From: Chlorokybus atmophyticus
Lineage: Eukaryota > Plantae > Mesostigma and Chlorokybus algae
DNA length: 64,000 bases
Assembly: GCA_009103225.1 (NCBI GenBank)
Contig: RHPI01002503.1
Coordinates: 298,363 to 362,362 of the forward strand
Direction: 5' to 3'
Of this stretch, positions 33,435-48,523 are shown one piece after another. Position 1 is the first letter of the stretch, and each line of letters opens with the position of its first letter. The position numbers and the translations under genes were made by a program. Under the pieces are notes generated by a model. The model did no database searches. It was given only the letters and a program-made list of their open reading frames with translations, and was not told the DNA's origin.

Positions 33435-35580
33435 TATGCGGTGACGCCATCATCCAAATTGTTGGAAAGCTTGTCCTGTCTCTTAGATCAATGGCAAGAC
33501 AGAGAGAAAGCATGGACATGACCAGAGTGTAGTGAAACAGAACAATACTGCAGCAAAAAGATAGGCAATTGTTGATAGGGGTAATTGTTGTGAGGTAATC
33601 ATTGCAAGGTGCCATAGGAGCTGCTACGCTAAACGCTAAACATACGGTCTCCTTGTGCTGTGTCTTCTACAAAGTTCAACATGCCAGCGCAAGACTGAGT
33701 GCATTGCATCCAGCTCGGTGTCTATCATTCAGCATCAACTTCGGATGCGGCATGCTTGCTTCCAATGCTTGGCAGTTTGTTTAAGCCCAAGAAGATGCCA
33801 ATTGTGCAAGCTGCTCTTAATCAGCCTCAAGCACGTCGCGCACATGGCCAGCTATGATGCTCATGACGTGATATTGGCATTGTTCATAAAGCTTGAGACC
33901 CGCTTGTTGAGTTTGCTTGCCAGCGACGTGACATGTCAGATTGCTATGTCAAAGCTGCATCCAATCGCAAAACAAATAAGCCCACACGTGAAGGGTGCTC
34001 ACCAGTTGCTCTGCGGTGAACGTCCACAAGCGCCGCTGCGTTGATGTTGGGTAATGCGCCATACAAGCACTTTTAGAAGCAACTTTGCGTGGCTATATGC
34101 TCACAGCTTTGAGCATGCTTTCCTGGCAGAAACCAACGCGTCAGCATACACAGCACCACGAACTGAATTGAATTCATCACAGGCGCATAACTTGCCGAGC
34201 TGAAAGGTAAACACACAGGAAAATTGAGCGCAATACAAGAGCCTTTCAACAGAGCCGCAATGCGGATGGGAAATGCGTACACTAACAACGAGGAGAGAGG
34301 AATGACGACAACTGCTGTTGACTACACAGATTCGGCATTGTGCATGCAGGCGGAAACAGCCATGAGATAACAAACTTGATCTAGAATGAAAGCAACAAGC
34401 GCAGCAGCCGACACTCCAATCAGGTGGCAGGCAAGCTAAGCCAGTAGATCGCGCACGCCCATACACGCACACATACATGCACATACCTCAACAACGGCCT
34501 GCCCAGCTTGCAGCGAAGCTTGCCAGTCCACCATCAAGCAGCAAGCGGATCGCCGCCCCCGAGCAAGCAATCCTACAACCGCTTGGACGACAATTCGTCC
34601 ATCCCGTGGTGTGTGCTTCCCGCCCAACACGATGCTCCTCCTCAGTCCTCCCTGCGCCTCTTCCGTGACAACGGCCTCCACCTCCACCTCCGCCTCCGCC
34701 TCCGCCTCCGCCTCAGCACAGTACTATCATGATGCGGGCTGGTTGTTGTGGGCGGCGGTGTCGTGTGACGGCGGCTGCGCGTCGGTGATCTCCGCGGCGC
34801 TGTCACCCATGTCCACGTCGTTGAACTTGGCCTCCGCTCCCCCCTACAAACAAACCCCTTCTCAGAGTCAGCAGGCAGAAGCAAACGCCCCGCAGAAGAA
34901 GTAGTAGGAGCCACACGCCTCTTCTTTCTTGAACTGTCGGGTACGTACGGTGCGGCAAAGCATGCATGCCGAATGGCCTCAGGGCGCTGGTTTGCGTTGT
35001 TCAGCGTAGTGACGTGAGAGTCCAGAAGCGTCCCTGCTTGCTGGTTCACAGCGGCTGATCGGTTTTGAAGCCGGTGCAAAGCCAGCCATGCATGCTTGCT
35101 TGCGTGCAAACTTTGCTTCGCAACTGAATTTGCCATGTTTGGTTGCGATCACTGAGTATCGATGTTTTGTGTGACTGCACATGCTTGCGATGCATGTTGA
35201 CAGCTGTGGGTGCATGTGCGTGTGCGTGCACACGCTCATGTGTGTGTGCATGTGTGTTTGCATGCATACGCATGCATGCGCATGGCGTGCATGCCTGCGT
35301 GCGTGTGCGTGTGCGTATGCGCCTGAGCATGGATGCGTATGGGCGCGTGCGTATAAACAATGGCACGCACATGCACGTGCATGTGTGTGCAACAGCATGC
35401 TCATACGTGCGCATGCGCATGTGCAGATTCGCATATGTGCACGCTGACGCACATGCACTTTGGTGCACGCACGTGCACGTGTGCGGGTGCATGTGGTCTG
35501 CAACTTATGCTTGTTGTTACAACTGCCAGCAGGTGGAGAGAAAAGTCAGTCATCACTCAACTCCCCATCGCCGTTGGCAA

Positions 35581-37405
35581 ATGCTACTTCACTTGGTGTC
35601 ACTCCTACCCTCGCATCCGACCTGCTGCTGCGCAGAGAAACCCAAAGCCAACCCGCACACACACCGCTCCACTCCCGCTACCATCACCAACAAGGACGCC
35701 GTCGACAATCCCAGCCGACAGCTGCGAAACAACAACAAGGCAACGTTGCCATTATGCAGCGGAGGCAAAGAGTCGTCTTGGAGGCTGTTGCTTTGCGGCG
35801 ATGATGGTGCTGGTGGCAACGGCGGAAACAAAGGGAGGAGAAGGCGAAGAACAGACAGTCATGACAATAATCACAGCAGCAACAACAACAACAACAGCAG
35901 CAGCAGCAACGACAACAACAGTAGGAGGCGTCGTAGTAGCTTGCAGCGCTCTCTGCTTGCCGGCAGCAGCTGCGTGTGCATAACACTCTGCGCAGCATCA
36001 TCAGCGTCATCATGCACAACATCACCATCACCATCAACCCCAACCGTGGCGATCATCATCCCAGCATTGAACGAGGCCGCAAGCATCGGCACAACATTAC
36101 GCTGTCTCGCACTGTTGGACCCTTCCGCGCGTGAAGTTATTGTGGTGGACGGCGGCAGCGTGGACGGCACCATCGACGTTGTTCGCAAGCATGTTGGTGT
36201 GGATGTTGTGCGCAGCGACAGACGTGGCCGTGCCGTTCAGATGAATAGAGGTGTAGCTGCGAGCGACTCGGATTACGTGTGCTTCGTGCACGCCGACACG
36301 ATCGTGCCGCAGGACCTGGTATGTGATTTGCGAAATAACGTCATGACCCAACACAACATGAAGTGATGTTGTGTGCTCAGGTTGCTATCATACGCAAGAG
36401 TCTTTCCAATGAGAGGACTGTTCTTGGCGGGTTCATCTCGAAAATGACGGTGCCCGGGCGGACACTGTGGGGCATCACTTTTCACAACTGGATTAAGGTG
36501 AGTTTACCATACTTGTTGGATTGCTGAGACTATTGGCCAACCTGTGGAGATGCTTTTATAAACCCGTTGTTTGTATGTGTGTTGTACCATACTTAAAGCA
36601 GACATACTACGGTCCGCTGCTGCTGAGGCCATTATCCTTCCTCTTTGGCTTCCGCTGCCTGTTTGGAGATCAGGTGTGCGTGTGAACAGAAACCTCCAAG
36701 AATAATATGTGTATGTGTGTGTGTGTGTGTGCGCGTGTGTGCGTGTGTGCAGTTGTTGTGCTCACCTTCTTAAGAACACAGTTCATGAAGCAACATTCTC
36801 GAAACGGAAATAATTGATTGGATGCAGGTCATGTTTTGCAGAAAGGCTGACTTCCTGCGAGTCGGAGGATTCGATGAAGATCTCAGCATCATGGAGGTTG
36901 GTATCTATCATTGAGATGAGACCTTGAGCTCAATCTACATGCCGGCAGAGTCATGATGTGTCTAAAACCTATTGGCACACACCATACAGGATGCGGACCT
37001 GTGCACTCGCATGCATATGAACCATCGCGTCGGCGAGCGCGGCTGGACTGCCCTGCATAAAAGAAGGCGAATACGCATGGTTAACAGAACTGTCCAGACA
37101 AGGTGATAATGTGTGGGACTTCTGTTGCTGGATGCTTGCAACGAGAGGCCCAAATGTGTGCGCGTGTGCGTTGACACTTGGATGTGCATGCAGCGGGAGG
37201 CGGGTTGTCGCTGTTGGACAAGCGAAGTCAACGTACATTCACTTTCTCATAGCCATGAGGTAGGTTTATGTGTGCAAGTGCTTTGTGAGATGCCTTGTGG
37301 CATTGGTTAAGGTGTATATTTACTTGCACTCACAGCTGGTACTGGGGTGCGTCGCCGGAGAGGCTTCGGTCGCTATACGACAATCTGTATACAGACATTA
37401 GATAA
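35581..37405 (+). CDS. Family 2 glycosyltransferase (bacterial 'transferase 2, rSAM/selenodomain-associated'-like) with a long low-complexity N-terminal extension; 7 exons
   Basis: VAIIIPALNEAASI...EVIVVDGGSVDGT...RGRAVQMNRG...YVCFVHADT; later exons LFGDQ|VMFCRKADFLRVGGFDEDLSIME|DADLC...QTS|GRR...SWYWGASPERLRSLY; stop TAA at 37403-37405. Confidence 0.85.
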
Positions 37406-38363
37406 TGACTTTCAAACATCTTCTGTAGAGTATGTGTGGCAGAATAGCACATGACAATTGTTGGTGCAGATCTGATAAGACGCAGATCAGGTCCCACGCC
37501 CAGCGACGCGCGCTTGTGCAGTAGCAATGATTTACCAGATGATACCCACGTTGACTCGACCCTTGATACTGACGGGTTGCAGCGCTTACTGGCGCGATCA
37601 TGTGTGCATGCATGCGTATTTGCGTGCATGTCGGTGCGCACTCAGTTCTATGGTTTTGTAGAAGGATGTGAACAGCACGATCGCAGCAAGTGACGTGAAG
37701 CGTACTGGAGATTTACCATCTCACTCTAGCCTATGGCCGCGTCAAGGCAACATGTGACGCGACACAAGAATGCTGCACTCAGTAACTTACCACAGCCTGC
37801 ACGCACATGTGAGCAACAACGTGCGCAATGGACCTAAAAGTTGAGGTAATGCTGATATTGAATGCACCTACTTGCTATGGTTTTTCTGCAGTTCTTTGGT
37901 GAAGGAGATGATACCTGTTCCATGCCACAAGGCATACATATGATGAAACACTACTGAAACACTACTCTACGTCGATCATCCCCCTGATGGATTGACGGAT
38001 GGCCCATTGGTTCAGATGATGTGCTTGCATTGACACTGGCTTAGTGAAGGACCAAGCTACCTCACAGTCCTACCATTTAAGTGTTGCTCGAGGTGCTCTT
38101 CCCAACAGTGAACATGTCACGTCATACACATGTGCCAAACCTGAGTACAACCAGCTTTGTAGCATCGCAACCTGCCAAGCAAGCAATGGATCATGGTACA
38201 TGAGTACAAAAAATATAGAACATTTAATACATAGTATACTAATTTGTTACAGACACAGCTGTGTGTGCAGTGGACAATGGCTTAGTAGCCCTACATGCCA
38301 TAGTAGTACTAGTACTTGTGTATGTACAACTCGTGTATGTACAACTCATGTTTGTACAACTTC

Positions 38364-41300
38364 TCACTCGGTGGGGGACTTTGGGGAAGGCGCTGCTAAT
38401 CCAATTGCATCTTCTTCTGTGAGCACATGCGCACGGTCATCTTTATTACCTTCAACCACGACAACGCCAGCATCCTTGTTGCCACTGCTCTCAGGGCCAT
38501 CCTGACTGTGTCCTGCATCTCCACAAGGCCGCAAGCTTGCGAAAGGTCCATAACAGATAGGCAGAGCACATTGCTATGATTAATGACACGGGTTGGTTGC
38601 GGTGCATGCTGAGTACTTCTGTAATGTGCGTGCGCTGTGGTGTTGTCAGCTTGCCTGCTTGCTCCTTGTGATTGCCGCTGTCATGATCAACGTCAATGTC
38701 GAGGTCAAGGTCCATGTTGAGGTCCATGTTGGCCATATCAGTCGCTTGATCCATGCTGCCGTATTCCTCAATTGGCAGGCCGTCGAATTCCATGTCAAGA
38801 GGACTTGCCGTCAGTTCATTGTCTAAGAGTGGGAAGTCTTCCTCCTTGAGCTCCTCCTCTGCTGTATCAGGTGTGGCATCATGTTCAAACCAGGGCTGAG
38901 GTGTTGCGAACTGCCACGCGCGGTATTCAGGGTCTCGCAATGACACGTCAAAGCCAGCTCCCGTGCCTGCAACACCAACACTTTAAACATTGTGGTTTTG
39001 TATGGCTGACACAATATCGTGCAACAAGTACCTCCTGAGCATGGCAGGCCAAGCGCTATGCGAGCATTTGGCCCCGTCAGAGCGTCAACTTTTCCAAATA
39101 CAGCTGCCTCTTTGATTGCTCGTAGCGGTTGCTGCAATACCGTGATGCACAACAGGTCAATGTGTGATGTCCAACCACCACTATCACATCAACAACATCC
39201 TCACCTCATCCGCAGCGGTGGCAAGGACACCTTCACTGCCTCTCCACTCAGCTGCGTGCGCTGCAGTAAACCCGCAGAGACGCCCTTGCCATGTCATATA
39301 ATCGACGATGAGTGCGATGTGCCGCTCCTCAACGATGATGTCGGCTTCGCGCAACACATCGCTGAGCAGCTGCAGCATGGTTGTCAGCTAGTTGTCGCCA
39401 ACCCTCGCAACAGATACGAACATGGACACTCACCTGCAACAGCTTGGCACGTGCGGCTTCGATGCCAAGAGCAGTCCACGTTTCGAGGCAGTCCTCCGGT
39501 TGAGTTGTAAGCATGTCAATCCAGCGCTGCAGTTGTATACATATACGTTGAGAGTTGCTGTGGAAAGAGCATGTAGTGCTGACTACGTAACACGTTGGCG
39601 TACAGCATGGCGATGATAGTAAGTTATGTTACATTCATGATGCCCACCAGCGCTTGCACTTACAGCTAGACCGCGCTTTGCAGGAAGGCAGTACTCCCAC
39701 AGTTCTCTCAGAAGACAGCGCTGTTCCTTTGCCCCGTCTTTTGCCGATGACGAGGTGTGTGGCTGGTGGCACTTTACTTCCACCGACACCTGGCGGTACA
39801 AACACATTTGACTATGCATTTGTGCATGAAAACAAATACTACCAAAAGTGACCAAACAGCGTTGAACAGCTCTCTAGTCACCGCACAAGACCACAATCCA
39901 ACCTGATCATCATCCTCAATGCGCGCGCACGCGTCCTCCACCCGCTGGAAACCTGTAGTAGCTCAGCATGAGTTAATGGTTGTACTTAGGAAGGAGTAAG
40001 CAAACCAGTGCTGCAAGTGCATAGGAGCCAACCTGACAGTGTCATGTCCAACAGATCGGTGACGAGGGCTCTGGCTCTTGTAAAGACAGTGTTCTCAGCC
40101 TCCTGGACCTCTTGCTCCATGCGCTTTACGGCAGCACGCGTGCCCTTGTGAGCGCTACGCAAGAGTTCGGCTTTGGACAAGAGCGTGCAATAGACATCAA
40201 TTGAAGCACTGCCAAAAGCAAGCTTGTTAGTAAGCCTGATAAGTAGTAGCTGGGCTTTGCATGGAATTGCAAGTTGCAAGCACTGACGTCTTCTCTTGAT
40301 CTTGATGAGGTCTGTAACAGGTAATGTCCGCCTCAAACATGTCCGACTGCGAGTGCGCTAGCCCGAAGAGGTCTCTGATGTGTTGCGCGTCTGCGACAGC
40401 ATCCTGCACGCACATACACAACAGCATGCATAATTGTCATGGAAGGAGCTGAGCTGGCCCGTGCAGAAGAGAATCGCGCCAAACATACAAGCTTACAGGT
40501 TTCAATATCAGGCGGAGTAGCCATGGCTTGAAGTTGTTGCAGCCTTCGATGCCAACATATCTACATCACACATGTGGTTACTTCTTGCAACGTCGTTGTC
40601 GCTGTATAATAACAGATGTATGGTGCAAGCACCGACCTCAACTCCCAGGCAGCTACGTATTGTTTAAGACAGCGGCGTTGCAGTTGATCGGCTACTGCCT
40701 TTGCAGAACGTGTCGTCGCATTGGGTGTCAAGGCAACTGTGTATGCTACCATTCCAGATGGCATTTTATGAAGGTATAGAAGCCTCTGTTCAGGAAACGA
40801 GTATTAAGAAAAGTGAAGCAGTGATGGTCAGTATTTCAAGCCTTTGCACTAGACACCTTCAGTTTGGTGCACAGGTCGTCGGAGACACCTTTGTTGGGCG
40901 CATTCAACATCTTCTGCTGCATTTGGGAGCACACGGCCTGGAGGGCCATCAGCTTTTCCATACAGAAGACAAGACAACGCTGCAAAGCACAGAACAATGC
41001 ATTGACGGCCACCTGTGCTGCTAGCAGCCCTACACACTGGTTGGCTTCGGCATGAAGGGAGTAGCTTGTCCCATCATCGCCCCCATCGTCCATGTCATCA
41101 GCACCTGTGACTTCATCTTCAACACCCGCATAATGGATGATCTGTTACACAGGTAAAAGATATGTCTCTCATTACAGGCTTACCCTCAAACTACCTTGAC
41201 ATACCTGAACGACACGTCCGGTTTGCACGCACTGCACACAGGCGGTGCCATCTCGGCTGTATGCTTGCACAATCGAGTTCATGCCGGCAGACACCCTCTT

Positions 41301-44300
41301 CCAAAGGTACCTGCCAAACAATGTTGCTTGCATGAACTATCGAATCAGAGTAAGCGGAAGTGCATACGACTTATGAGGTACCCCGGCGTGGAGGTCTCGC
41401 ACTGTTTGAGGCAGATGGTGCGCCGTCCCTCAGCGGCGTGCCAGAAAAACTAGCAGGAAACAGTCCATGTTGGTTACGGGCTTACCAAGGACAGCATGCC
41501 ATCTCTACAACCCACCTCTACTGGTGAAAGGCCCTGAAGGAGGGAGCTGCGCACGAAGCCTGTGCAGGCGCGATGCGTGATGGCATTGTTGGGAAAGAAG
41601 GGGAAGGAGCCAGCCATGCCGTGTTGTTGACCCAACTCCTCGCGCATCTGCAGTGGTTCACCATCAGCAACTCAATGCTTTTCAATGCTTCATTCCAACA
41701 TCTACATTCATCACACCCGCGTCAAGTGTCTCTGGGAGCCTGCTGAGCCGGCTGCTGCCATTACGTCCAAGGAGGAGGAGTTGTTGTTTGCTGAGGGGCT
41801 GAAAACATCAGCTATGCCGGCTGTAAAGCCGACACGCGCAAGGTGTGCGTGCGCCATGTTAGACAAACGACGAGCCAGCAGCACCGGGTCGGTGTTGCTG
41901 CGCCCCATTGCCTTCCTGTTGATTATCCTTGCAAACAGGCTTTGCATCTCCGCCTTGTCCAATCGCTTGTCCATATGGTAAACATCACCAAGCAGCCAAT
42001 TGAGTGCCTGTTTGGCATAGAACAGATCCCCATTAAAAGGGACCAAGTCTGCGGCATCAATGCCATCACCATCAATGCTGGCTCCCATCAAGTCATGAAA
42101 CTCTTCTGTTGAAAGCTTTTTGTCAGGAGCGGTCAACAAGTAACTCCCCAGAAGCGCATCCTGGCGCAAGCTGAGCAATGTCTCGGACCCTTTTTCAGAC
42201 AAAACCTTGTCTACGATTAACAGCTCCTGCGCATCAACACGTGCTGCTAGGGATTGCGGCACAAAGACGTTCATTTCGTCTCCTGCGCAGATAGGTTGAG
42301 AGTTCATCTTAAGGGAGCAGATGATGTGCTGTATATATGCAACGGCTGCGATCCCTTTACTCACCGTCAAAATCAGCATTGTACGCTGGGCACACAGTAG
42401 GATTCAGGTGCAGGGATGATGTTGGCAGGACGCGTACGCTGTGGGCCATAAGGGATTGTCTATGTAGACTTGGCTGCCTGCATGAACGAGCAGGTGATCT
42501 CAAACTCGTCCTTGATACACTACACAGTGCTGCAGTAGTTTGCAAGGACTGACCAAGTACTTCACCTGTTCATGACGACCAAGTCGCCGTCTTGCAGATG
42601 GCGGGCAACAACGATGCAGTGTCCATCTGCCAGGGCAGCCTGTACACCAACATTGTCAACCGCATGTGAAAATGATAGAATCAGTACGCACCTGATGCGT
42701 ACCGTAAAGTTGTGCACTGGCATCTCTCTCGCCAAGTTAAAGCGCCGCGCCACGCTACCGTCTTCACCCATTACCATCATCTCATTGGCACCCACCACAC
42801 CTGCAGCAGCATACGGCCCAGCTTTCATGCAGCGTTCCAACCTGTAGTCAAGTTGTTGTTAACAAGAAACCAGAAGTAAGACAGAAGGAAACCAGATACA
42901 GCTTATACTGGCATGCCTATATACCGTTGGACGTTGTATGGTGTCACAATCTCGGGTACAGTAAGCGCTCGGGCCATGCTTCGTGGGATACCAACCTGCT
43001 CACCACAAGCGATGTAAGGCATTATGCATGACAAGTTCAATCACAGTCACAGTCACAGTCACAACACTGCTGATTTGCCACGGAAATTTACCTCCCCTGG
43101 TGCCAAACAAGGATCAGGCGTAATCACTGATCTTGCGGACATGTCGCTGCGCTTGCCTGTGACCGTGCCGCGGATACGGCCCTGCTTAGTAACGCCGCCA
43201 TCCACCAAGCGTGCAGGACACTTGCCATCCTGCGGGCACTCTCATGAGTGTTGGCGCATAAGTCATGTCATATGGTATGACATATATCCGTGTGCCAACT
43301 TGCCTGCTTATGGCCAGAGATGCGCATGGCTATACTCGGCAGCACCTGCATTGCACAGAGAAGGAGTCAAAACTACTCAGTTGCTGAGCTGCGTGCTATC
43401 AATCTCGTCTTCTCATCATATGCCAACCGGTTGCAAACTGAGTGGCAGCCGGTCTGTTTTGCTACAGTTGGAATCCGCACGAGTGTCTTTGCCCAAAATG
43501 TAAGCATTGACTCTGTCCTGCAGCTGCGAAACCACAAGAGAAGGTGAAACTATAAAGACTTTCCACTGAGCATAAGAGTTGACAGTCTTGATCTGTGGAC
43601 TCACTGTTTCCGTCATGGCCTTCAATATATGGGGCGCTCGTCCCTGATCCTTAGCCTCTTCAACCTTCTTATTAGCGAGGTAGATGGACCTCAAAGCAGC
43701 ATCCAGGCCACCCTGAACACAGCCACTTATGGCTCAATCTTATGTGCAGAAGAGTTGCTGTCACAGTATGCCGTACCAATGTGGCATCAGGGCCGTTGGC
43801 GCAGTGCGAAGCTGCAATGGAGAATCTTATGGCACTGGGAGGGATGGGCAGCTGGCAGATTAGCCAGCTAGTTGGGTGGGAGTGCTTGACATCCAGACCC
43901 AAGAAGACGTAGTAGTCGTCGCTGACTCTTGTGAACAACTCCAACACCTGCAAATGAGGCCAACTGTCAGCCTGGCGTGCATGTACACTGCATGCTGCTC
44001 CTTCCCTCAAACCGCACCTTGCTGGCTGACTTGGCTTTTTGGTGCTGGTCATTGCTGCCTGTTCGCTTGTTGCCTTTGGCATTGCTTTCTGTCACATTCT
44101 TCTGGATGTTGTCATGGCTGTTGTTGTTATCGCCGTTGCTGCTGCTGCGGCCAGTGCTGTTCGCTTTGCGCACCAGAACTTTGCTTTTGCTGTGTTTGTC
44201 CACGCGGATGACAAACGTCCTTCGTCTGCGCCGACACGGCTCCAGCAACAACTCCTAGCAGTTGAAACGCAGCGACACGTATCTCACACGCGCACACGCA

Positions 44301-45150
44301 TGATCAAACGCAAAATATGCAGCAACATCCACCTTAGAAACATCTCACACCTCAGGATCTGATGTTGAAGCGTGTGGCATCGACACATCTGGCGTCTTGT
44401 CAAATCCCAGCCACTGCACAAAGCTGGCATGTTCATTTCTCTCAGGCTGGTCATCCGCTTTGGCCCGGTCTCTCGTGCGAGTTGAGCCCCGTCGCTTGGT
44501 GCCGCCATGACAAACCAGTGTGCCTCGGCACGCTGATGCTGCCTTCTTCAAGCGCTTCAACCCTTTGGTACCCCGCAAGAGGGGTGCCAGCTCAACCTGT
44601 AACGTACATGTTTGGTTGTGGCACGTGCTGGTAGTGGGCGGACATCAACAAGCACAGCCTCACCAATGGCAGGACAGGCCTCGCACACTTGGGACACAGG
44701 ATGTCCAGCAGCAGCTTGATGTACTCCAAGAAAGTGGGGTTGAAGACTGGTGCTTGCAACTTAAGATGGCCAAAATGCCCTGCATGAACATGAGCTCAGT
44801 TCAGCACGAAGGCTGCCAAGGAACACACAAGCAAGCTTCTGCCAGTGATACCTGGACAGTTGCCAACTTCTCCGCACGTTGCACATGCACCAACGCCCTG
44901 CTGCAGGACGCTCGCAGTGGGACCAAGTGAAGCATCGTGAAGGCCACCGTAATCTGCATAGTTATTGCTGTGGGTATGCAAGCCAAGCATGCCATGCATG
45001 TGCACAGCATTCACTACGGCTTGTGCCTAGCTCACCCTTTCGCCTCCAGTATGCTGCTTTGGTGACTGACTGGTCTTCCTGCAGGTGAGAGATATCCATG
45101 ACTTCAACCATTGAGAGTGAGCCTAGCGTCAGCAGTCGAGTTGAGATCAT
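38364..45150 (-). CDS. Divergent RNA polymerase largest subunit, RPB1-derived NRPD1/NRPE1 (Pol IV/V)-like; more than 20 exons
   Basis: GGLHDASLG...[11 protein letters not shown]|[32 protein letters not shown]; LPIPPSAIR; [26 protein letters not shown]; [24 protein letters not shown]; [13 protein letters not shown]|[12 protein letters not shown]; YNADFD|GDEMN; [15 protein letters not shown]|FFWHA; LGIEAAR; [14 protein letters not shown]; GTGAGFDV. No YSPTSPS heptads. 3' end (TGA at 38364) is tentative. Confidence 0.9.
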
Positions 45151-45332
45151 CAAGCGTAGCGTACCAGTTCGCAAGGGGACATTGTCGTAAAATGGACGGA
45201 GGTGATGGTTGCCGACCGATGAGCTGACGTGTCGCGGTCACAGGACGCCATGCAGAATGTCCTGCATTGGTTGTTTTGCACTTGTGTGAGACGATCTCAT
45301 GATGAAAAACAAGAGAGTCTCAGACCCACACA

Positions 45333-45473
45333 CTCTTCACAGCTCTGACAGAAGCACACCTCAGTTGCCATACATGCATGCGCAGGTGCATGCACAAGTG
45401 AACTTCAGTCGTGCATGCAGCTGCGCATGCATGCATGGCAACTGAGGTGTGCTTTTGTCAAAGTTGTGAAGAG
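45333..45473. repeat. Foldback with 63-bp arms (58/63 complementary) and a 15-nt loop, 183 bp upstream of the polymerase ATG; MITE-like or hairpin-RNA locus
   Basis: Left arm 45333-45395 vs reverse complement of 45411-45473 differ at 5 positions, 4 of them transitions. Confidence 0.9.
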
Positions 45474-46534
45474 GACATTCGTGAACGTCAACTTTCTACT
45501 AGAAGTTGGTGCCAAACCCAAAATCACGAGAGATCATTGAGGATGGCTTGATCATCAGTCTGAAGACAAATGTCGTACTGTTGGCAAACCATGCATGCAC
45601 AGGCGCACACATGCATGCGAGTCAGTGCATGCATCGCAAGCGACAGTTGTAACATGGTTGGTCGTGCATGTACTGGACCACGATCACAGCCTCAACTTCT
45701 GTATTACGTGCACAAGGCGAACTCATTGCCAGCATGTGACATGCTGGCAATGCCAGTGAACAAGAACCAGTCTTGCTAGTGGCGCATCAACCGGACCAAC
45801 GCATCAACGAGCGAGTTTTGCTTCAGCAATGTGGCTCACAAACATGCCTGTGTAAGCTGAAACAATGTCAGGCTTCAGACCACCAGCATTGCCTCACTTG
45901 TCCCCCTTTTGTCCCCAACAAGCATGTCTGTGGCATGCACACATCATCCGTGCAGTGCAACTGCCTCGACCTTAAGCCAGCTGTGTGCCAATCAGCCACT
46001 GCATGACCTTGATAGACAAGCTGCTTGCGGCATTGCACGCAAAGCTTATACAGCTTCTCCATGACAATGCGACTAGCCAAGCATAGCTCACCCGCTGCCA
46101 CCGTCAGAAGAAGTGCTAGGACGACACTCCTGCTCCGCCTCCGGTACGACCCGCTCACAGGGAGCGAGCAGCGACCTCCACGTCTCCTTCATCGCCTCGC
46201 CCGCGGTGGCGGGCCGCAGCGACATCGCCGCCCACCACGTGGCTAGGCAGCAGCAGCTAAGCTGCGCACTCAGCTGCAGCTTAGCTTTGAGCGTGCTGCA
46301 ATGCACACACTGGCTTCGTTTTGGCAAGGCGCAGCTATAAGTTTCACACAAGAAAGCTTTTTTTCGTCTTGTGCGGCTCGCACAACGGTCAAGTTGTTGT
46401 GCGGTTGTGCAGTGCAGTGCAGTGGTGAAGCGGCGGCGGCGGCGGCGGTGTTGGGGAGGGGAGGGGAGGCAGGCTGTGAGTCTGCCTGTGGCTGCTTTGA
46501 CAAAAGAGGCTGGGTTTGCGCCGTGCTGTCCAGG

Positions 46535-48523
46535 ATGAGCAAGCGGTCGGGAGACGGGGGCGCTGGAGGAGGGGACGCCAAGCGGGGCAGAAAGGGCAGA
46601 GGGCATTACGTGCAGGTTGGTCGCGTATGAGAGGTGCTGTGGCTTGCCATGTGTGCTGTGCCTTTGATGCGCGTTGAGCTTTGCTTGTTGGATGACTTTG
46701 TGCATCTCCTTTTTCAATCTCATCTGCGGGAGAGAAAGCATAAAAATAGTCATGCACATGCTGCGAGAGCAAGCGCATGGAGGCTATGCTGCTGTCGTAA
46801 GCTGGCAGGGGGTTTAAGATTTTAGCTTGCGTTAGCAGCGGATTTTACCATCTTCGTGACAGCTGCTAGCCTGCATTGGTCCCAACCAAACAAGCAAATG
46901 CGTATTGTGGTCTTCCAACACATGCAGACGTCACAAGCAGTTGTTCGTAATGTGAGTATGCGTGCTGCTCTCTAGTATTCTCTTACACAGGAAATAGAAC
47001 ACTTGGTGTGCTTCAGCTTAGACTATTACGTTGAGCTATCTTGTGGTGTTGATCAGCAATCATTGACTGGCAGGCACAGCAACGGGGGCCAAAATCGGAT
47101 GGCATTCCCTTGGGTGTGAGGGGCTTCTTGCTGTCTGCGGATCAGCACAAAGAAAATGTTGCTGCAAGAGATGCCATCAACTTCTTGACTGAAGTAGGTT
47201 TTCAATATCTTCTCCTAGCTTATCTTAACCTACCTTGTCCATCAACTGCTAACATCCTTAGTGCAAGCGCAGACTGATCAGTTGCGCTTGATTAACATCA
47301 CTCGCATGTGTACATGAGGGTTCATACAGGTTGCGTTGTCTTGTGCTGCAGTATTGGGAAAAGGATCCACGAATCTCAAGTCAAGGGGACGGCAAAGCCG
47401 AGCCTGCTGCGCCTTCGGGGCGAACTGTGGACTCATTGCTAGAGGCTGAAATCGATGACCTGAAAGACCACAAGCAGGTACGCATGGTAGCAGCTGTTTG
47501 GGGCATTGTATTGTGGGCCTGTTTCGTGACGTCTCGTGCGCAGGAGCTGTTTGAGAAGGAGTCTACAGGCTGCAACAGCATGGTGTTCATTATAATGGCG
47601 CCTGAGTCAGAAAGACCTGGCCCAGGTCCGTGCGAACTTACCAGGCAGATGCTGCGTGATGTAGCAAAGACGAAGAAAAGTAGATCAAAGTACGCAAGCT
47701 TGCTACCTTTTGGATCACAAGCATGGGTTGTTGGCACAGTGTATTGAAGCGCATCAACCTAAGCCATCTCAAATATTCCATTGTGCAGGCATTGCATAAG
47801 GATATTGCCAGTGGACGACACATGTTACGCTGGGTTGGTTGAGATTGAGAAGGCTGTCAAGCCTATGTTGCAAGCGGCGTTCCCTACTGGCGAGGGTGTC
47901 ACTCCACTGAAGGTTAGCATGTGTCCTCTGTCTTCATATTTGTCACAACATAACTACCCTGCCTGACATGCACACAAATGCTGCAGTTTTCAGTCGTGTG
48001 CGATGTGAGGAACAACAGCGGGCTGAAGCGAATGGACGTCATTGATGTCGTTGCAAAGTTGGTGCCAGCCCCACACAAAGTTGACTTGGAAAACCCTGAG
48101 CGCTGCATATTGGTGCAAGTTGTCAAGGTAAGAACACCTGAGGCCTCAGCCCGCATCGCATATGTAGCTGCACATGTGTTGCTATGCGTGTTCTGGGCAA
48201 AGCAACCGCTACACGTAGCTTGTTGTTTTGACGCACCCATGGCCAAAGCCTTGGTTTTGACTGATTGCTGCGCTCTTGCACAGACCACATGCGCGTTGAG
48301 CATATTGGAAGAGTACAAAGAGCTCGCGAAGTACAACATGCGCGTGCTGGCAGAGCCGCCCAAAGAAGAGCAAACGGAGTCAGCAGCCAAGGACAGTGCT
48401 GCCAAGTCCTCTGCTGAGGATGCTGATGCACCAGGTAGCAAGGTAGAGAACGGTTCGCACACTGAGGTGCCATCAGCTGATGCCTCACAGCAACCAAAAG
48501 CATCAACGGACAATCCAACTTGA
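46535..48523 (+). CDS. THUMP domain protein (THUMPD1/Tan1-like tRNA acetylation adaptor); 7 exons
   Basis: MSKR...HYVQ|...GVRGFLLSADQHKENVAARDAINFLTE|...DSLLEAEIDDLK...TGCNSMVFI...KSRSK|HCIRILPVDDTCYA...|FSVVCDVRNNSGLKRMDVIDVVAKLVPAPHKVDLENPERCILVQVVK|TTCALSILEEYKELAKYN. Confidence 0.9.

What the first reader, a model, noticed from the sequence alone, without database searches (positions are those of the whole stretch)
38364..45150. Ancestral-looking Pol IV/V (NRPD1/NRPE1) largest subunit in an algal-type genome
Seen: the metal-A motif is the canonical YNADFDGDEMN (split by intron 42283-42364). The bridge helix is degenerate ([29 protein letters not shown] vs RPB1 [29 protein letters not shown]). 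Only about 30 aa separate VVQIIHY from [10 protein letters not shown], where RPB1 has about 200 aa (foot region). The clamp reads VFNPTFL...LLDILCPKC and the end reads GTGAGFDV. Known: foot deletion, bridge-helix and trigger-loop decay and a GTG-x-FD ending characterise plant Pol IV/V, whereas Pol I/II/III keep these elements; land-plant Pol IV/V have altered residues around DFDGD. Inference: an early Pol IV/V subunit that still has the RPB1-type active-site context, which bears on how RNA-directed DNA methylation arose.
Basis: partly seen in the sequence, partly recalled or inferred. Interest (0 to 1): 0.88.

Follow-up and report, generated by a model that had tools for sequence, protein, structure and literature searches.

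The report
Alga's fourth RNA polymerase catalytic subunit
The streptophyte alga Chlorokybus expresses a stripped-down copy of the RNA polymerase II catalytic subunit that looks like the plant gene-silencing polymerases IV/V; a fragment of it was published in 2024, so the full-length gene refines a known story rather than opening a new one.

Summary
Window 45251-38122 (minus strand) carries a 33-exon, 1443-codon gene of Chlorokybus atmophyticus, annotated as Chrsp44S05854. It is transcribed and spliced: one 4.6-kb RNA contig gives 27 junctions.

At cDNA level the protein has:
- an intact YNADFDGDEMN metal-A site;
- a degenerate bridge helix;
- a trigger loop without the catalytic His;
- 29 residues where Pol II has its roughly 165-190-residue foot;
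- about 95 residues missing from the pore/funnel region;
- no heptad CTD.

These are the hallmarks of plant Pol IV/V largest subunits. A published table lists separate NRPA1, NRPB1 and NRPC1 genes for this alga, so this is a fourth paralogue.

The idea is not new. Chakraborty et al. 2024 reported a partial C. atmophyticus NRPD1/NRPE1-like transcript.

New here:
- the full-length model;
- the trigger-loop region;
- the fully canonical metal-A context;
- a 134-residue acidic tail with no AGO hooks and no DeCL domain.

My trees could not place the protein (branch 2.6-3.9 substitutions per site). Profile scores favour the Pol II type. I could not bring NRPD1/NRPE1 sequences into a tree, so orthology rests on shared derived characters and the published tree.

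The parts
38122..45251 (-). Coding region of the polymerase largest-subunit paralogue (33 exons, 1443 codons). Exons, high-low: 45251-45165, 45078-45036, 44953-44852, 44779-44664, 44596-44351, 44254-44018, 43947-43777, 43712-43605, 43523-43428, 43345-43304, 43229-43092, 42995-42925, 42841-42703, 42639-42566, 42477-42365, 42282-41717, 41647-41516, 41449-41382, 41310-41205, 41141-41013, 40937-40857, 40785-40637, 40560-40497, 40403-40288, 40208-40033, 39952-39903, 39789-39664, 39526-39434, 39369-39205, 39131-39032, 38966-38692, 38501-38368, 38140-38122
   Evidence: RNA contig junctions and pieces. Length and depth bookkeeping. Same gene as annotated protein P0001 = jgi/Chlat1/6251/Chrsp44S05854. 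First intron (45164-45079) accepted on homology to the Pol II N-terminus. Intron 38691-38502 supported. Last intron (38367-38141) rests on the annotation and contig length only.
44685..44885 (-). Clamp-core zinc motifs: [16 protein letters not shown] and [21 protein letters not shown]
   Evidence: Aligned to the Pol II profile. The CxxC reads CPKC, not the NRPD1-specific C[KR]YC.
44018..44596 (-). About 160-residue basic, low-complexity insertion in the clamp (two exons, residues 117-277; contains RRRRR)
   Evidence: About 0 bits against all five clade profiles. Mostly an insertion relative to the Pol II profile; only its first ~30-45 residues align to the clamp zinc region.
43230..43345 (-). 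42-nt exon ([14 protein letters not shown]) followed by a GC-AG intron (43303-43230). The annotated protein skips this exon.
   Evidence: Transcript length matches only with this exon. Bin depth 43151-43350 agrees. Absent from P0001.
42269..42383 (-). Metal-A site YNADFDGDEMN, split by intron 42364-42283
   Evidence: Junction. Pfam Rpb1 domain 2, E 1e-51. Alignment.
41717..42090 (-). Shortened pore/funnel region: about 101 residues (661-761) where the Pol II profile has 197 positions
   Evidence: Gap between Pol II profile positions 561 and 759. Pfam domain 3 matched only at 2-58 of 162, and domain 4 not at all.
41292..41449 (-). Degenerate bridge helix [29 protein letters not shown]
   Evidence: Aligned to [29 protein letters not shown] of Pol II and Pol III chains.
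41043..41129 (-). 29-residue acidic linker that stands in place of the foot domain
   Evidence: Pol II profile positions 888-1083 have no counterpart. Lies inside exon 41141-41013, which is bounded by RNA junctions.
40884..41042 (-). Trigger-loop remnant [10 protein letters not shown] | [18 protein letters not shown], split by intron 41012-40938. Gln, Leu and Asn are kept; the catalytic His and the GEP motif are lost.
   Evidence: Alignment to the Pol II profile. Junction 40936|41012. The annotation wrongly reads through this 75-nt intron.
39664..40883 (-). Jaw/cleft region of about 250 residues that is unrecognisable by sequence, apart from a [11 protein letters not shown] motif
   Evidence: 0 bits with all clade profiles. 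No PDB hit even at E 10.
38944..39526 (-). Conserved C-terminal cleft/clamp block (domain H), ending in GTGAGFDV
   Evidence: Pfam Rpb1 domain 5. 53-70 bits with every clade profile.
38122..38943 (-). 134-residue acidic tail (35 D/E, 7 K/R) with no GW/WG, no heptads and no DeCL domain
   Evidence: The next gene downstream is a convergent glycosyltransferase on the + strand.

Best explanation

Shown:
- The gene is intact, spliced and expressed.
- The catalytic Mg-binding loop and its surroundings are kept.
- The parts that give Pol II speed, fidelity and factor coupling are degenerate or gone: bridge helix, trigger-loop His, foot, much of the pore/funnel, and the heptad CTD.

Inferred:
- It pairs with the ordinary second subunit NRPB2 and the shared small subunits, because no NRPD/E2 has been found in early-diverging orders.
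- It makes non-coding RNA slowly and with errors, as Pol IV and Pol V do.
- Because its tail has no AGO hooks and no DeCL domain, it probably does not recruit Argonaute the way Pol V does. The core decay therefore came before the silencing tail was added.
For: Gene and expression:
- 27 RNA junctions and an uninterrupted 1443-codon frame over 33 exons.
- Organism and gene identity: P0001 = jgi/Chlat1/6251/Chrsp44S05854.

Hallmark set:
- DFDGD kept, bridge helix and trigger loop decayed, about 163 profile positions of foot missing just upstream of the trigger loop, no heptads.
- These are the same features the literature uses to define Pol IV/V subunits (PMC11194755 section 6).

Fourth paralogue:
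- The supplementary table of PMC7994812 lists Chrsp97S08381, Chrsp119S01776 and Chrsp4S06335 under NRPA1, NRPB1 and NRPC1, and nothing under NRPD1/E1.

Pol II affinity:
- PDB phmmer bits: RPB1 316-282, RPC1 271/234, RPA1 196-180.
- Clade profile bits: RPB1 420, giant-virus 399, RPC1 363, archaeal 340, RPA1 290.
- All 50 best Foldseek hits are Pol II RPB1.
- The N-terminal tree puts it next to RPB1 plus giant-virus RPB1, bootstrap 82.

Published phylogeny:
- A partial C. atmophyticus transcript groups with charophyte NRPD/E1.
Against: - I could not put NRPD1/NRPE1 sequences in a tree.
- Without them the protein is a 2.6-3.9 substitutions-per-site branch outside every crown clade.
- AU tests do not reject a union with RPC1 (p 0.54 full length, 0.15 N-terminal half) or RPA1 (in the full-length quick tree it already sits on the RPA1 side of a branch with SH-aLRT 81, a join flagged as long-branch attraction; AU p 0.40 on the N-terminal half), and nearly reject RPB1 alone on the N-terminal half (p 0.07).
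- The 66 class-diagnostic columns give no clear signal: 22 match RPB1, 20 RPC1 and 13 RPA1.
- Similarity to solved NRPD1 (136 bits) and NRPE1 (105-109 bits) is far lower than to RPB1.
- There is no DeCL domain, no AGO hook and no C[KR]YC motif.
- I could not confirm that the published partial transcript is this gene, because the paper's supplements are not held.
Confidence: 0.65

Rival explanations
1. It is an independent, Chlorokybus-lineage paralogue of a polymerase largest subunit (most likely of NRPB1). It lost the foot, the trigger-loop His, bridge-helix conservation and the CTD by convergence, and is not orthologous to NRPD1/NRPE1.
For: - The placement is unresolved in all my trees.
- The active-site context is fully Pol II-like, unlike the other charophyte homologues as described.
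- None of the tail features of the charophyte homologues is present.
- No relative closer than ordinary RPB1 turned up among 1.8 billion representatives for the 188-residue exon, or among 5.8 billion clusters for the full protein.
Against: - The same discrete deletion, at the same place and of about the same size as in Pol IV/V, is an unlikely coincidence.
- The host is a streptophyte, the only lineage known to have such subunits.
- The published tree groups a partial C. atmophyticus transcript with NRPD/E1.
Confidence: 0.2
2. It is an expressed relic: a decaying duplicate that no longer forms an active polymerase.
For: - About 300 residues (trigger loop to jaw) match nothing.
- The branch is very long.
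- The AlphaFold model is poor from the bridge helix through the trigger loop into the start of the jaw: pLDDT under 50 for residues 495-680 of the modelled segment, except 557-569.
Against: - A 4.3-kb frame stays open across 33 exons, and all introns are spliced correctly.
- The metal-A loop, NRQPSLH, the [13 protein letters not shown] block and the zinc motifs are strictly kept.
- Functional Pol IV/V show the same pattern of decay.
Confidence: 0.08
3. It derives from an endogenised giant-virus (Nucleocytoviricota) RPB1 gene.
For: - CTD-less proteins of about 1480 residues, which I confirmed as giant-virus RPB1, score almost as high as cellular RPB1.
- The protein also lacks a CTD.
Against: - The AU test rejects a union with the viral clade on the N-terminal half (p 0.03).
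- The viral profile scores 21 bits below the cellular RPB1 profile.
- The viral proteins keep the foot, bridge helix and trigger loop (alignment patterns).
- The gene has 32 host-type introns, and its GC content matches its flanks.
Confidence: 0.04
4. It is the alga's canonical Pol I, II or III largest subunit, and looks odd only because of a bad gene model.
For: The annotated model does contain errors: a skipped exon and a retained intron.
Against: - The cDNA-level model still lacks the foot, the trigger-loop His and the CTD.
- The crown clades of RPA1, RPB1 and RPC1 each exclude it, with 98-100 support.
- Other Chlorokybus genes are listed as NRPA1, NRPB1 and NRPC1.
Confidence: 0.02

Closest known systems
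Single-copy NRPD1/NRPE1 precursors of charophytic green algae (Klebsormidium nitens, Chara braunii, Closterium, Penium; Chakraborty et al. 2024, PMC11194755)
   Same: A streptophyte-alga paralogue of the Pol II largest subunit with DFDGD kept, bridge helix and trigger loop degenerate, the foot of about 190 residues deleted, and no heptad CTD. That paper also reports a partial transcript from this same species.
   Different: - Those with known C-termini carry many AGO hooks and mostly a DeCL domain. This one has a 134-residue acidic tail with neither.
- The paper says the wider metal-A context is not conserved in them. Here it is the full YNADFDGDEMN.
- This one also lacks about 95 residues of pore/funnel.
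NRPE1, largest subunit of plant Pol V (PDB 8HYJ, 8HIL)
   Same: Same set of core decays. The catalytic loop is retained.
   Different: - Only 105-109 bits of sequence similarity, against 316 for RPB1.
- NRPE1 has an AGO-hook platform and a DeCL domain, altered residues around DFDGD, and a dedicated second subunit NRPD/E2.
NRPD1, largest subunit of plant Pol IV (PDB 7EU0, 8XMB)
   Same: Same set of core decays.
   Different: - NRPD1 has the C[KR]YC motif and a DeCL domain. This protein reads CPKC and has no DeCL.
- From my own knowledge of the Pol IV-RDR2 structure, NRPD1 also has funnel helices that dock RDR2. Here most of the pore/funnel region is missing.
- Sequence similarity is 136 bits.
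RPB1 / NRPB1, largest subunit of Pol II
   Same: Best match by sequence, by profile and by Foldseek. The metal-A context is identical. The N-terminal strand, the zinc motifs and the GTGxFD end are shared.
   Different: Missing here: the heptad CTD, the foot, the trigger-loop His, a conserved bridge helix, and recognisable jaw domains 6 and 7.

Membership tests
Pol IV/V largest subunit (NRPD1/NRPE1 lineage) | Groups with NRPD1/NRPE1, apart from NRPA1, NRPB1 and NRPC1, in a phylogeny | tested here: inconclusive
   No NRPD1/NRPE1 sequence could be brought into the sandbox. Without them the protein lies outside all crown clades, and AU tests reject only the giant-virus union. A published tree places a partial C. 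atmophyticus transcript there.
Pol IV/V largest subunit (NRPD1/NRPE1 lineage) | Metal-A DFDGD retained | tested here: met
   YNADFDGDEMN at 42383-42269
Pol IV/V largest subunit (NRPD1/NRPE1 lineage) | Bridge helix no longer conserved | tested here: met
   [22 protein letters not shown] against [22 protein letters not shown]
Pol IV/V largest subunit (NRPD1/NRPE1 lineage) | Trigger loop degenerate or shortened | tested here: met
   The catalytic His and GEP are absent; Gln, Leu and Asn are kept
Pol IV/V largest subunit (NRPD1/NRPE1 lineage) | [quoted passage not shown] | tested here: met
   33 residues span Pol II profile positions 888-1083, inside an RNA-supported exon. Boundaries were not compared residue by residue with NRPD1/NRPE1.
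Pol IV/V largest subunit (NRPD1/NRPE1 lineage) | No heptad-repeat CTD | tested here: met
   No Y[ST]P[STAGN]SP anywhere in the protein
Pol IV/V largest subunit (NRPD1/NRPE1 lineage) | DeCL (PF11523) domain in the tail | tested here: not met
   No Pfam hit in the tail at E 1. The ORFs tested in the 6 kb downstream show only a convergent glycosyltransferase.
NRPE1 (Pol V type) | AGO-hook platform (GW/WG repeats) | tested here: not met
   Zero GW or WG in the whole 1443-residue model
NRPD1 (Pol IV type) | C[KR]YC motif in the N-terminal clamp | tested here: not met
   The corresponding CxxC reads CPKC
Pol IV/V largest subunit (NRPD1/NRPE1 lineage) | An extra paralogue beside canonical NRPA1, NRPB1 and NRPC1 | tested here: met
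   From a published table, not from the genome itself. Chrsp97S08381, Chrsp119S01776 and Chrsp4S06335 stand in the NRPA1/B1/C1 columns for C. atmophyticus. This gene is Chrsp44S05854.
Pol IV/V largest subunit (NRPD1/NRPE1 lineage) | Assembles with NRPD/E2 and acts in siRNA-guided DNA methylation | not testable with these tools
   Only this window is available. The literature found no NRPD/E2 in early-diverging orders.
RPB1 (Pol II) | Heptad CTD and intact foot, bridge helix and trigger loop | tested here: not met
RPC1 / RPA1 (Pol III / Pol I) | Falls inside the RPC1 or RPA1 clade and keeps their class-specific insertions | tested here: not met
   Both clades exclude it with 100 support. Nearly all RPA1-specific insertions are absent. 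Their profiles score 57 and 130 bits below RPB1. AU tests cannot exclude a deep sister position.
Giant-virus RPB1 | Falls with Nucleocytoviricota RPB1 | tested here: not met
   AU p 0.03 on the N-terminal half; 32 spliceosomal introns

The most novel reading that the evidence does not exclude
The Chlorokybus protein is not an orthologue of NRPD1/NRPE1. It is a second, independent spin-off of a polymerase largest subunit that converged on the same losses (foot, trigger-loop His, bridge-helix conservation, CTD). If so, this stripped-down design is a repeatable way to build a specialised non-coding RNA polymerase.
Probability: 0.15. Interest if true: 0.7.

Novelty: new member of a known kind. Interest (0 to 1): 0.4.

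Why it matters
When and how the plant silencing polymerases arose is an open question.

- A 2021 survey found no NRPD1/E1 in any streptophyte alga (PMC7994812).
- A 2024 study found them in four charophyte orders, but had only a partial Chlorokybus transcript, which it called a hint (PMC11194755).

The full-length, RNA-supported gene from one of the earliest-branching streptophytes shows the core decays already complete. It also shows the active-site context still Pol II-like and none of the Argonaute-binding or DeCL tail.

If the gene is orthologous, this orders the events:
1. Duplication and core simplification happened at or near the base of Streptophyta.
2. The tail and the dedicated second subunit were gained later.

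That would suggest the first fourth polymerase did not yet work through AGO hooks. This is an incremental refinement of published work, not a new system.

Tried and rejected
1. Brute-force enumeration of intron chains timed out or gave millions of solutions. I replaced it with motif-guided exon calls checked against transcript length and bin depth.

2. My first model had a wrong first exon ([11 protein letters not shown]) and a collinear 3' end. I corrected it after comparison with P0001, with the Pol II N-terminus and with the RNA-word test.

3. I could not fetch NRPD1/NRPE1 sequences for a tree:
- The full-length search listed only RPB1-type proteins.
- The C-terminal-half search returned RPA1 only.
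- The exon search of 1.8 billion representatives found only the gene itself above noise.
- Cluster names were uninformative.
- PDB searches return no sequences.

4. The look-up of encoding contigs has no record of P0001.

5. The supplements of PMC11194755 are not held.

6. Class-diagnostic residues and clade-specific indels were not decisive, beyond excluding RPA1-type insertions.

7. The AlphaFold model (pLDDT 63, pTM 0.42) was too poor globally for TM-based ranking. Foldseek only confirmed RPB1-type local similarity.

8. The protein-atlas search gave leads only.

Full report
**What is there**

The finding lies on the minus strand. Six-frame ORFs and Pfam scans of single exons already showed pieces of RNA polymerase Rpb1 domains 1, 2, 3 and 5.

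Two RNA data sets of the same organism hold the gene. Laying them on 38951-44950 gave one 4633-nt contig at depth 38. It had no sequence differences and 27 junctions, of which 15 were listed. All listed junctions shift to GT-AG on the minus strand.

The eight unlisted introns between 43776 and 42478 were set by reading frame, splice sites and homology. They were then checked in two ways:
- The seven exons between them sum to exactly the 668 nt that the contig's own coordinates require.
- Each 200-nt depth bin matches to within 2-3 nt.

One of these introns is GC-AG (43303-43230). My model has 27 introns inside the laid stretch, the same number as the tool counted.

**Ends of the gene**

The 188-residue exon, searched against 1.84 billion representatives, found one strong hit. 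This was P0001, 1502 residues and 100% identical. A later search names it eukprot jgi/Chlat1/6251/Chrsp44S05854, that is Chlorokybus atmophyticus.

Comparison of P0001 with the RNA-based model shows that the annotation skips the 42-nt exon and reads through the in-frame 75-nt intron 41012-40938.

The annotation is right where my first model was wrong, at both ends:
- 5' end: its first intron (45164-45079) gives VHFTTMSPCELEDQSVTK, which matches the Pol II N-terminal strand VQFGILSPDEIKRMSVTE.
- 3' end: no RNA run holds any of 16 sampled words of 38515-38685, although run X1 holds 48% of the gene's words. So 38691-38502 is an intron.

The last small intron (38367-38141) rests only on the annotation and on contig length. 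The final model has 33 exons and 1443 residues, with the CDS at 45251-38122.

**Check of the observation**

Every quoted motif is present:
- YNADFDGDEMN is split by the RNA-confirmed intron 42364-42283.
- The bridge helix reads [29 protein letters not shown].
- VVQIIHY and [10 protein letters not shown] are 29 residues apart. Apart from the VVQ codons at the end of the preceding exon, the stretch lies within one exon bounded by RNA junctions, so cDNA does not restore the foot.

Against a profile of ten cellular RPB1 proteins:
- Profile positions 888-1083 (foot) face 33 residues.
- Positions 562-758 (pore/funnel) face 101 residues.
- The trigger loop aligns as [21 protein letters not shown]. 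Gln, Leu and Asn are kept, but the catalytic His and GEP are gone.

Pfam sees domains 1, 2 and 5, only the first third of domain 3, and nothing of domains 4, 6 and 7. The roughly 300 residues from trigger loop to jaw match no solved structure even at E 10.

The tail after GTGAGFDV is 134 residues with 35 D/E against 7 K/R. The whole protein has no GW or WG, no heptad and no DeCL domain. The next gene downstream is a convergent family-2 glycosyltransferase, so no further exons are hidden there.

**Which polymerase class**

| Test | Result |
|---|---|
| phmmer against solved structures, whole protein | RPB1 316-282 bits; archaeal Rpo1N 272-244; RPC1 271 and 234; RPA1 196-180; ASFV 152; NRPD1 136; NRPE1 109-105 |
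| phmmer, C-terminal half | RPC1 and RPB1 tie near 72 bits |
| Profiles built from equal-sized clades | RPB1 420; giant-virus RPB1 399; RPC1 363; archaeal 340; RPA1 290 |
| Foldseek with a low-confidence AlphaFold model (pLDDT 63) | 50 best matches are all Pol II RPB1 |

In the clade-profile test the RPB1 lead comes from the conserved N-terminal half. The viral identity of the giant-virus clade was confirmed on GVMAG contigs.

Trees were not decisive. With 44 sequences under LG+C20, the protein is a branch of 3.9 (full length) or 2.6 (N-terminal half) substitutions per site. It lies outside the RPA1, RPB1, RPC1, viral and archaeal crown clades, each of which has 98-100 support. On the N-terminal half it is sister to RPB1 plus viral RPB1, with bootstrap 82.

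| AU test: query united with | Full length | N-terminal half |
|---|---|---|
| RPB1 | p 0.57 | p 0.07 |
| RPC1 | p 0.54 | p 0.15 |
| RPA1 | already one side of a branch (SH-aLRT 81; long-branch join flagged) | p 0.40 |
| Giant-virus RPB1 | not tested | p 0.03 |

Class-diagnostic columns were uninformative: 22 match RPB1, 20 RPC1 and 13 RPA1 out of 66. The protein does lack almost all RPA1-specific insertions.

I could not obtain any NRPD1 or NRPE1 sequence as a usable object. The decisive tree was therefore not run.

**Is it an extra paralogue?**

The supplementary table of Wang et al. 2021 (PMC7994812) lists three Chlorokybus identifiers, then a blank, in the columns NRPA1, NRPB1, NRPC1 and NRPD1/E1. 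The identifiers are Chrsp97S08381, Chrsp119S01776 and Chrsp4S06335. The column order is my reading, and it is consistent to the end of the row. None of the three is Chrsp44S05854, so the gene is a fourth largest subunit that the survey missed. Its text says no NRPD1/E1 was found in streptophyte algal genomes.

**What is already known**

Chakraborty et al. 2024 (PMC11194755) describe single-copy NRPD1/NRPE1 precursors in charophytes. [quoted passage not shown] They also have AGO hooks, and mostly a DeCL domain, in Klebsormidium, Chara, Closterium and Penium.

For C. atmophyticus they had only a partial transcript without the trigger loop. It appears in a supplementary tree and is described as hinting that all orders have such a polymerase. 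They found NRPD/E2 only in later-diverging orders.

What this window adds:
- the complete RNA-supported gene;
- the trigger-loop state;
- an extra pore/funnel loss;
- a fully canonical metal-A context, where the paper generalises that the context is not conserved in charophyte homologues;
- a short acidic tail without AGO hooks or DeCL.

**Verdict**

The most likely reading (0.65) is the Chlorokybus member of the NRPD1/NRPE1 lineage: the catalytic subunit of a simplified, Pol II-derived fourth polymerase that presumably shares NRPB2. Its role in silencing is inferred, not shown, and the gene carries no feature that ties it to Argonaute.

Rival readings:
- an independent convergent paralogue (0.2);
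- an expressed relic (0.08);
- a viral origin (0.04);
- a mis-modelled canonical subunit (0.02).

The scan's other notes on this window (trigger loop without His; funnel deletion) agree with what I found. A note on another piece of the genome named Chlorokybus, which one search confirmed.

Noticed in passing
window 43230-43345 and 40938-41012: The public gene model (P0001, Chrsp44S05854) differs from the RNA in two places. It skips a 42-nt exon that is followed by a GC-AG intron. It also reads through an in-frame 75-nt intron in the middle of the trigger loop, which adds 25 spurious residues.
   Followed up: yes
window 44018-44596: A basic, Ser/Asn/Lys/Arg-rich insertion of about 160 residues in the clamp, including RRRRR. 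It spans two exons and matches no polymerase class. It could be a nuclear-localisation or nucleic-acid-binding segment.
   Followed up: partly
window 39664-40883: About 250-300 residues between the trigger loop and domain H give 0 bits against every polymerase profile and no PDB hit at E 10. AlphaFold still predicts ordered strands and helices there, with pLDDT 60-85.
   Followed up: partly
window 35143-36366 (+): A convergent gene with a family-2 glycosyltransferase domain (Pfam E 3e-19) lies downstream of the polymerase gene.
   Followed up: no
window 45252-45448 and 46088-46759: The RNA contig has about 284 nt upstream of position 45165. The annotation adds 45 N-terminal residues from an exon near 46100-46270 that have no polymerase homology. 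Which 5' end is real is open.
   Followed up: no
P0051-P0168 (hits); loci L001-L080: Most metagenomic proteins labelled 'RNA polymerase II subunit RPB1' are about 1480 residues long, and many carry inteins. In the trees the sampled ones form one clade (100 support) apart from cellular RPB1, and one member (P0062) has 42-71% identical relatives on GVMAG contigs in IMG/VR, so they are most likely giant-virus RPB1. They score nearly as high as cellular RPB1 against this protein.
   Followed up: partly
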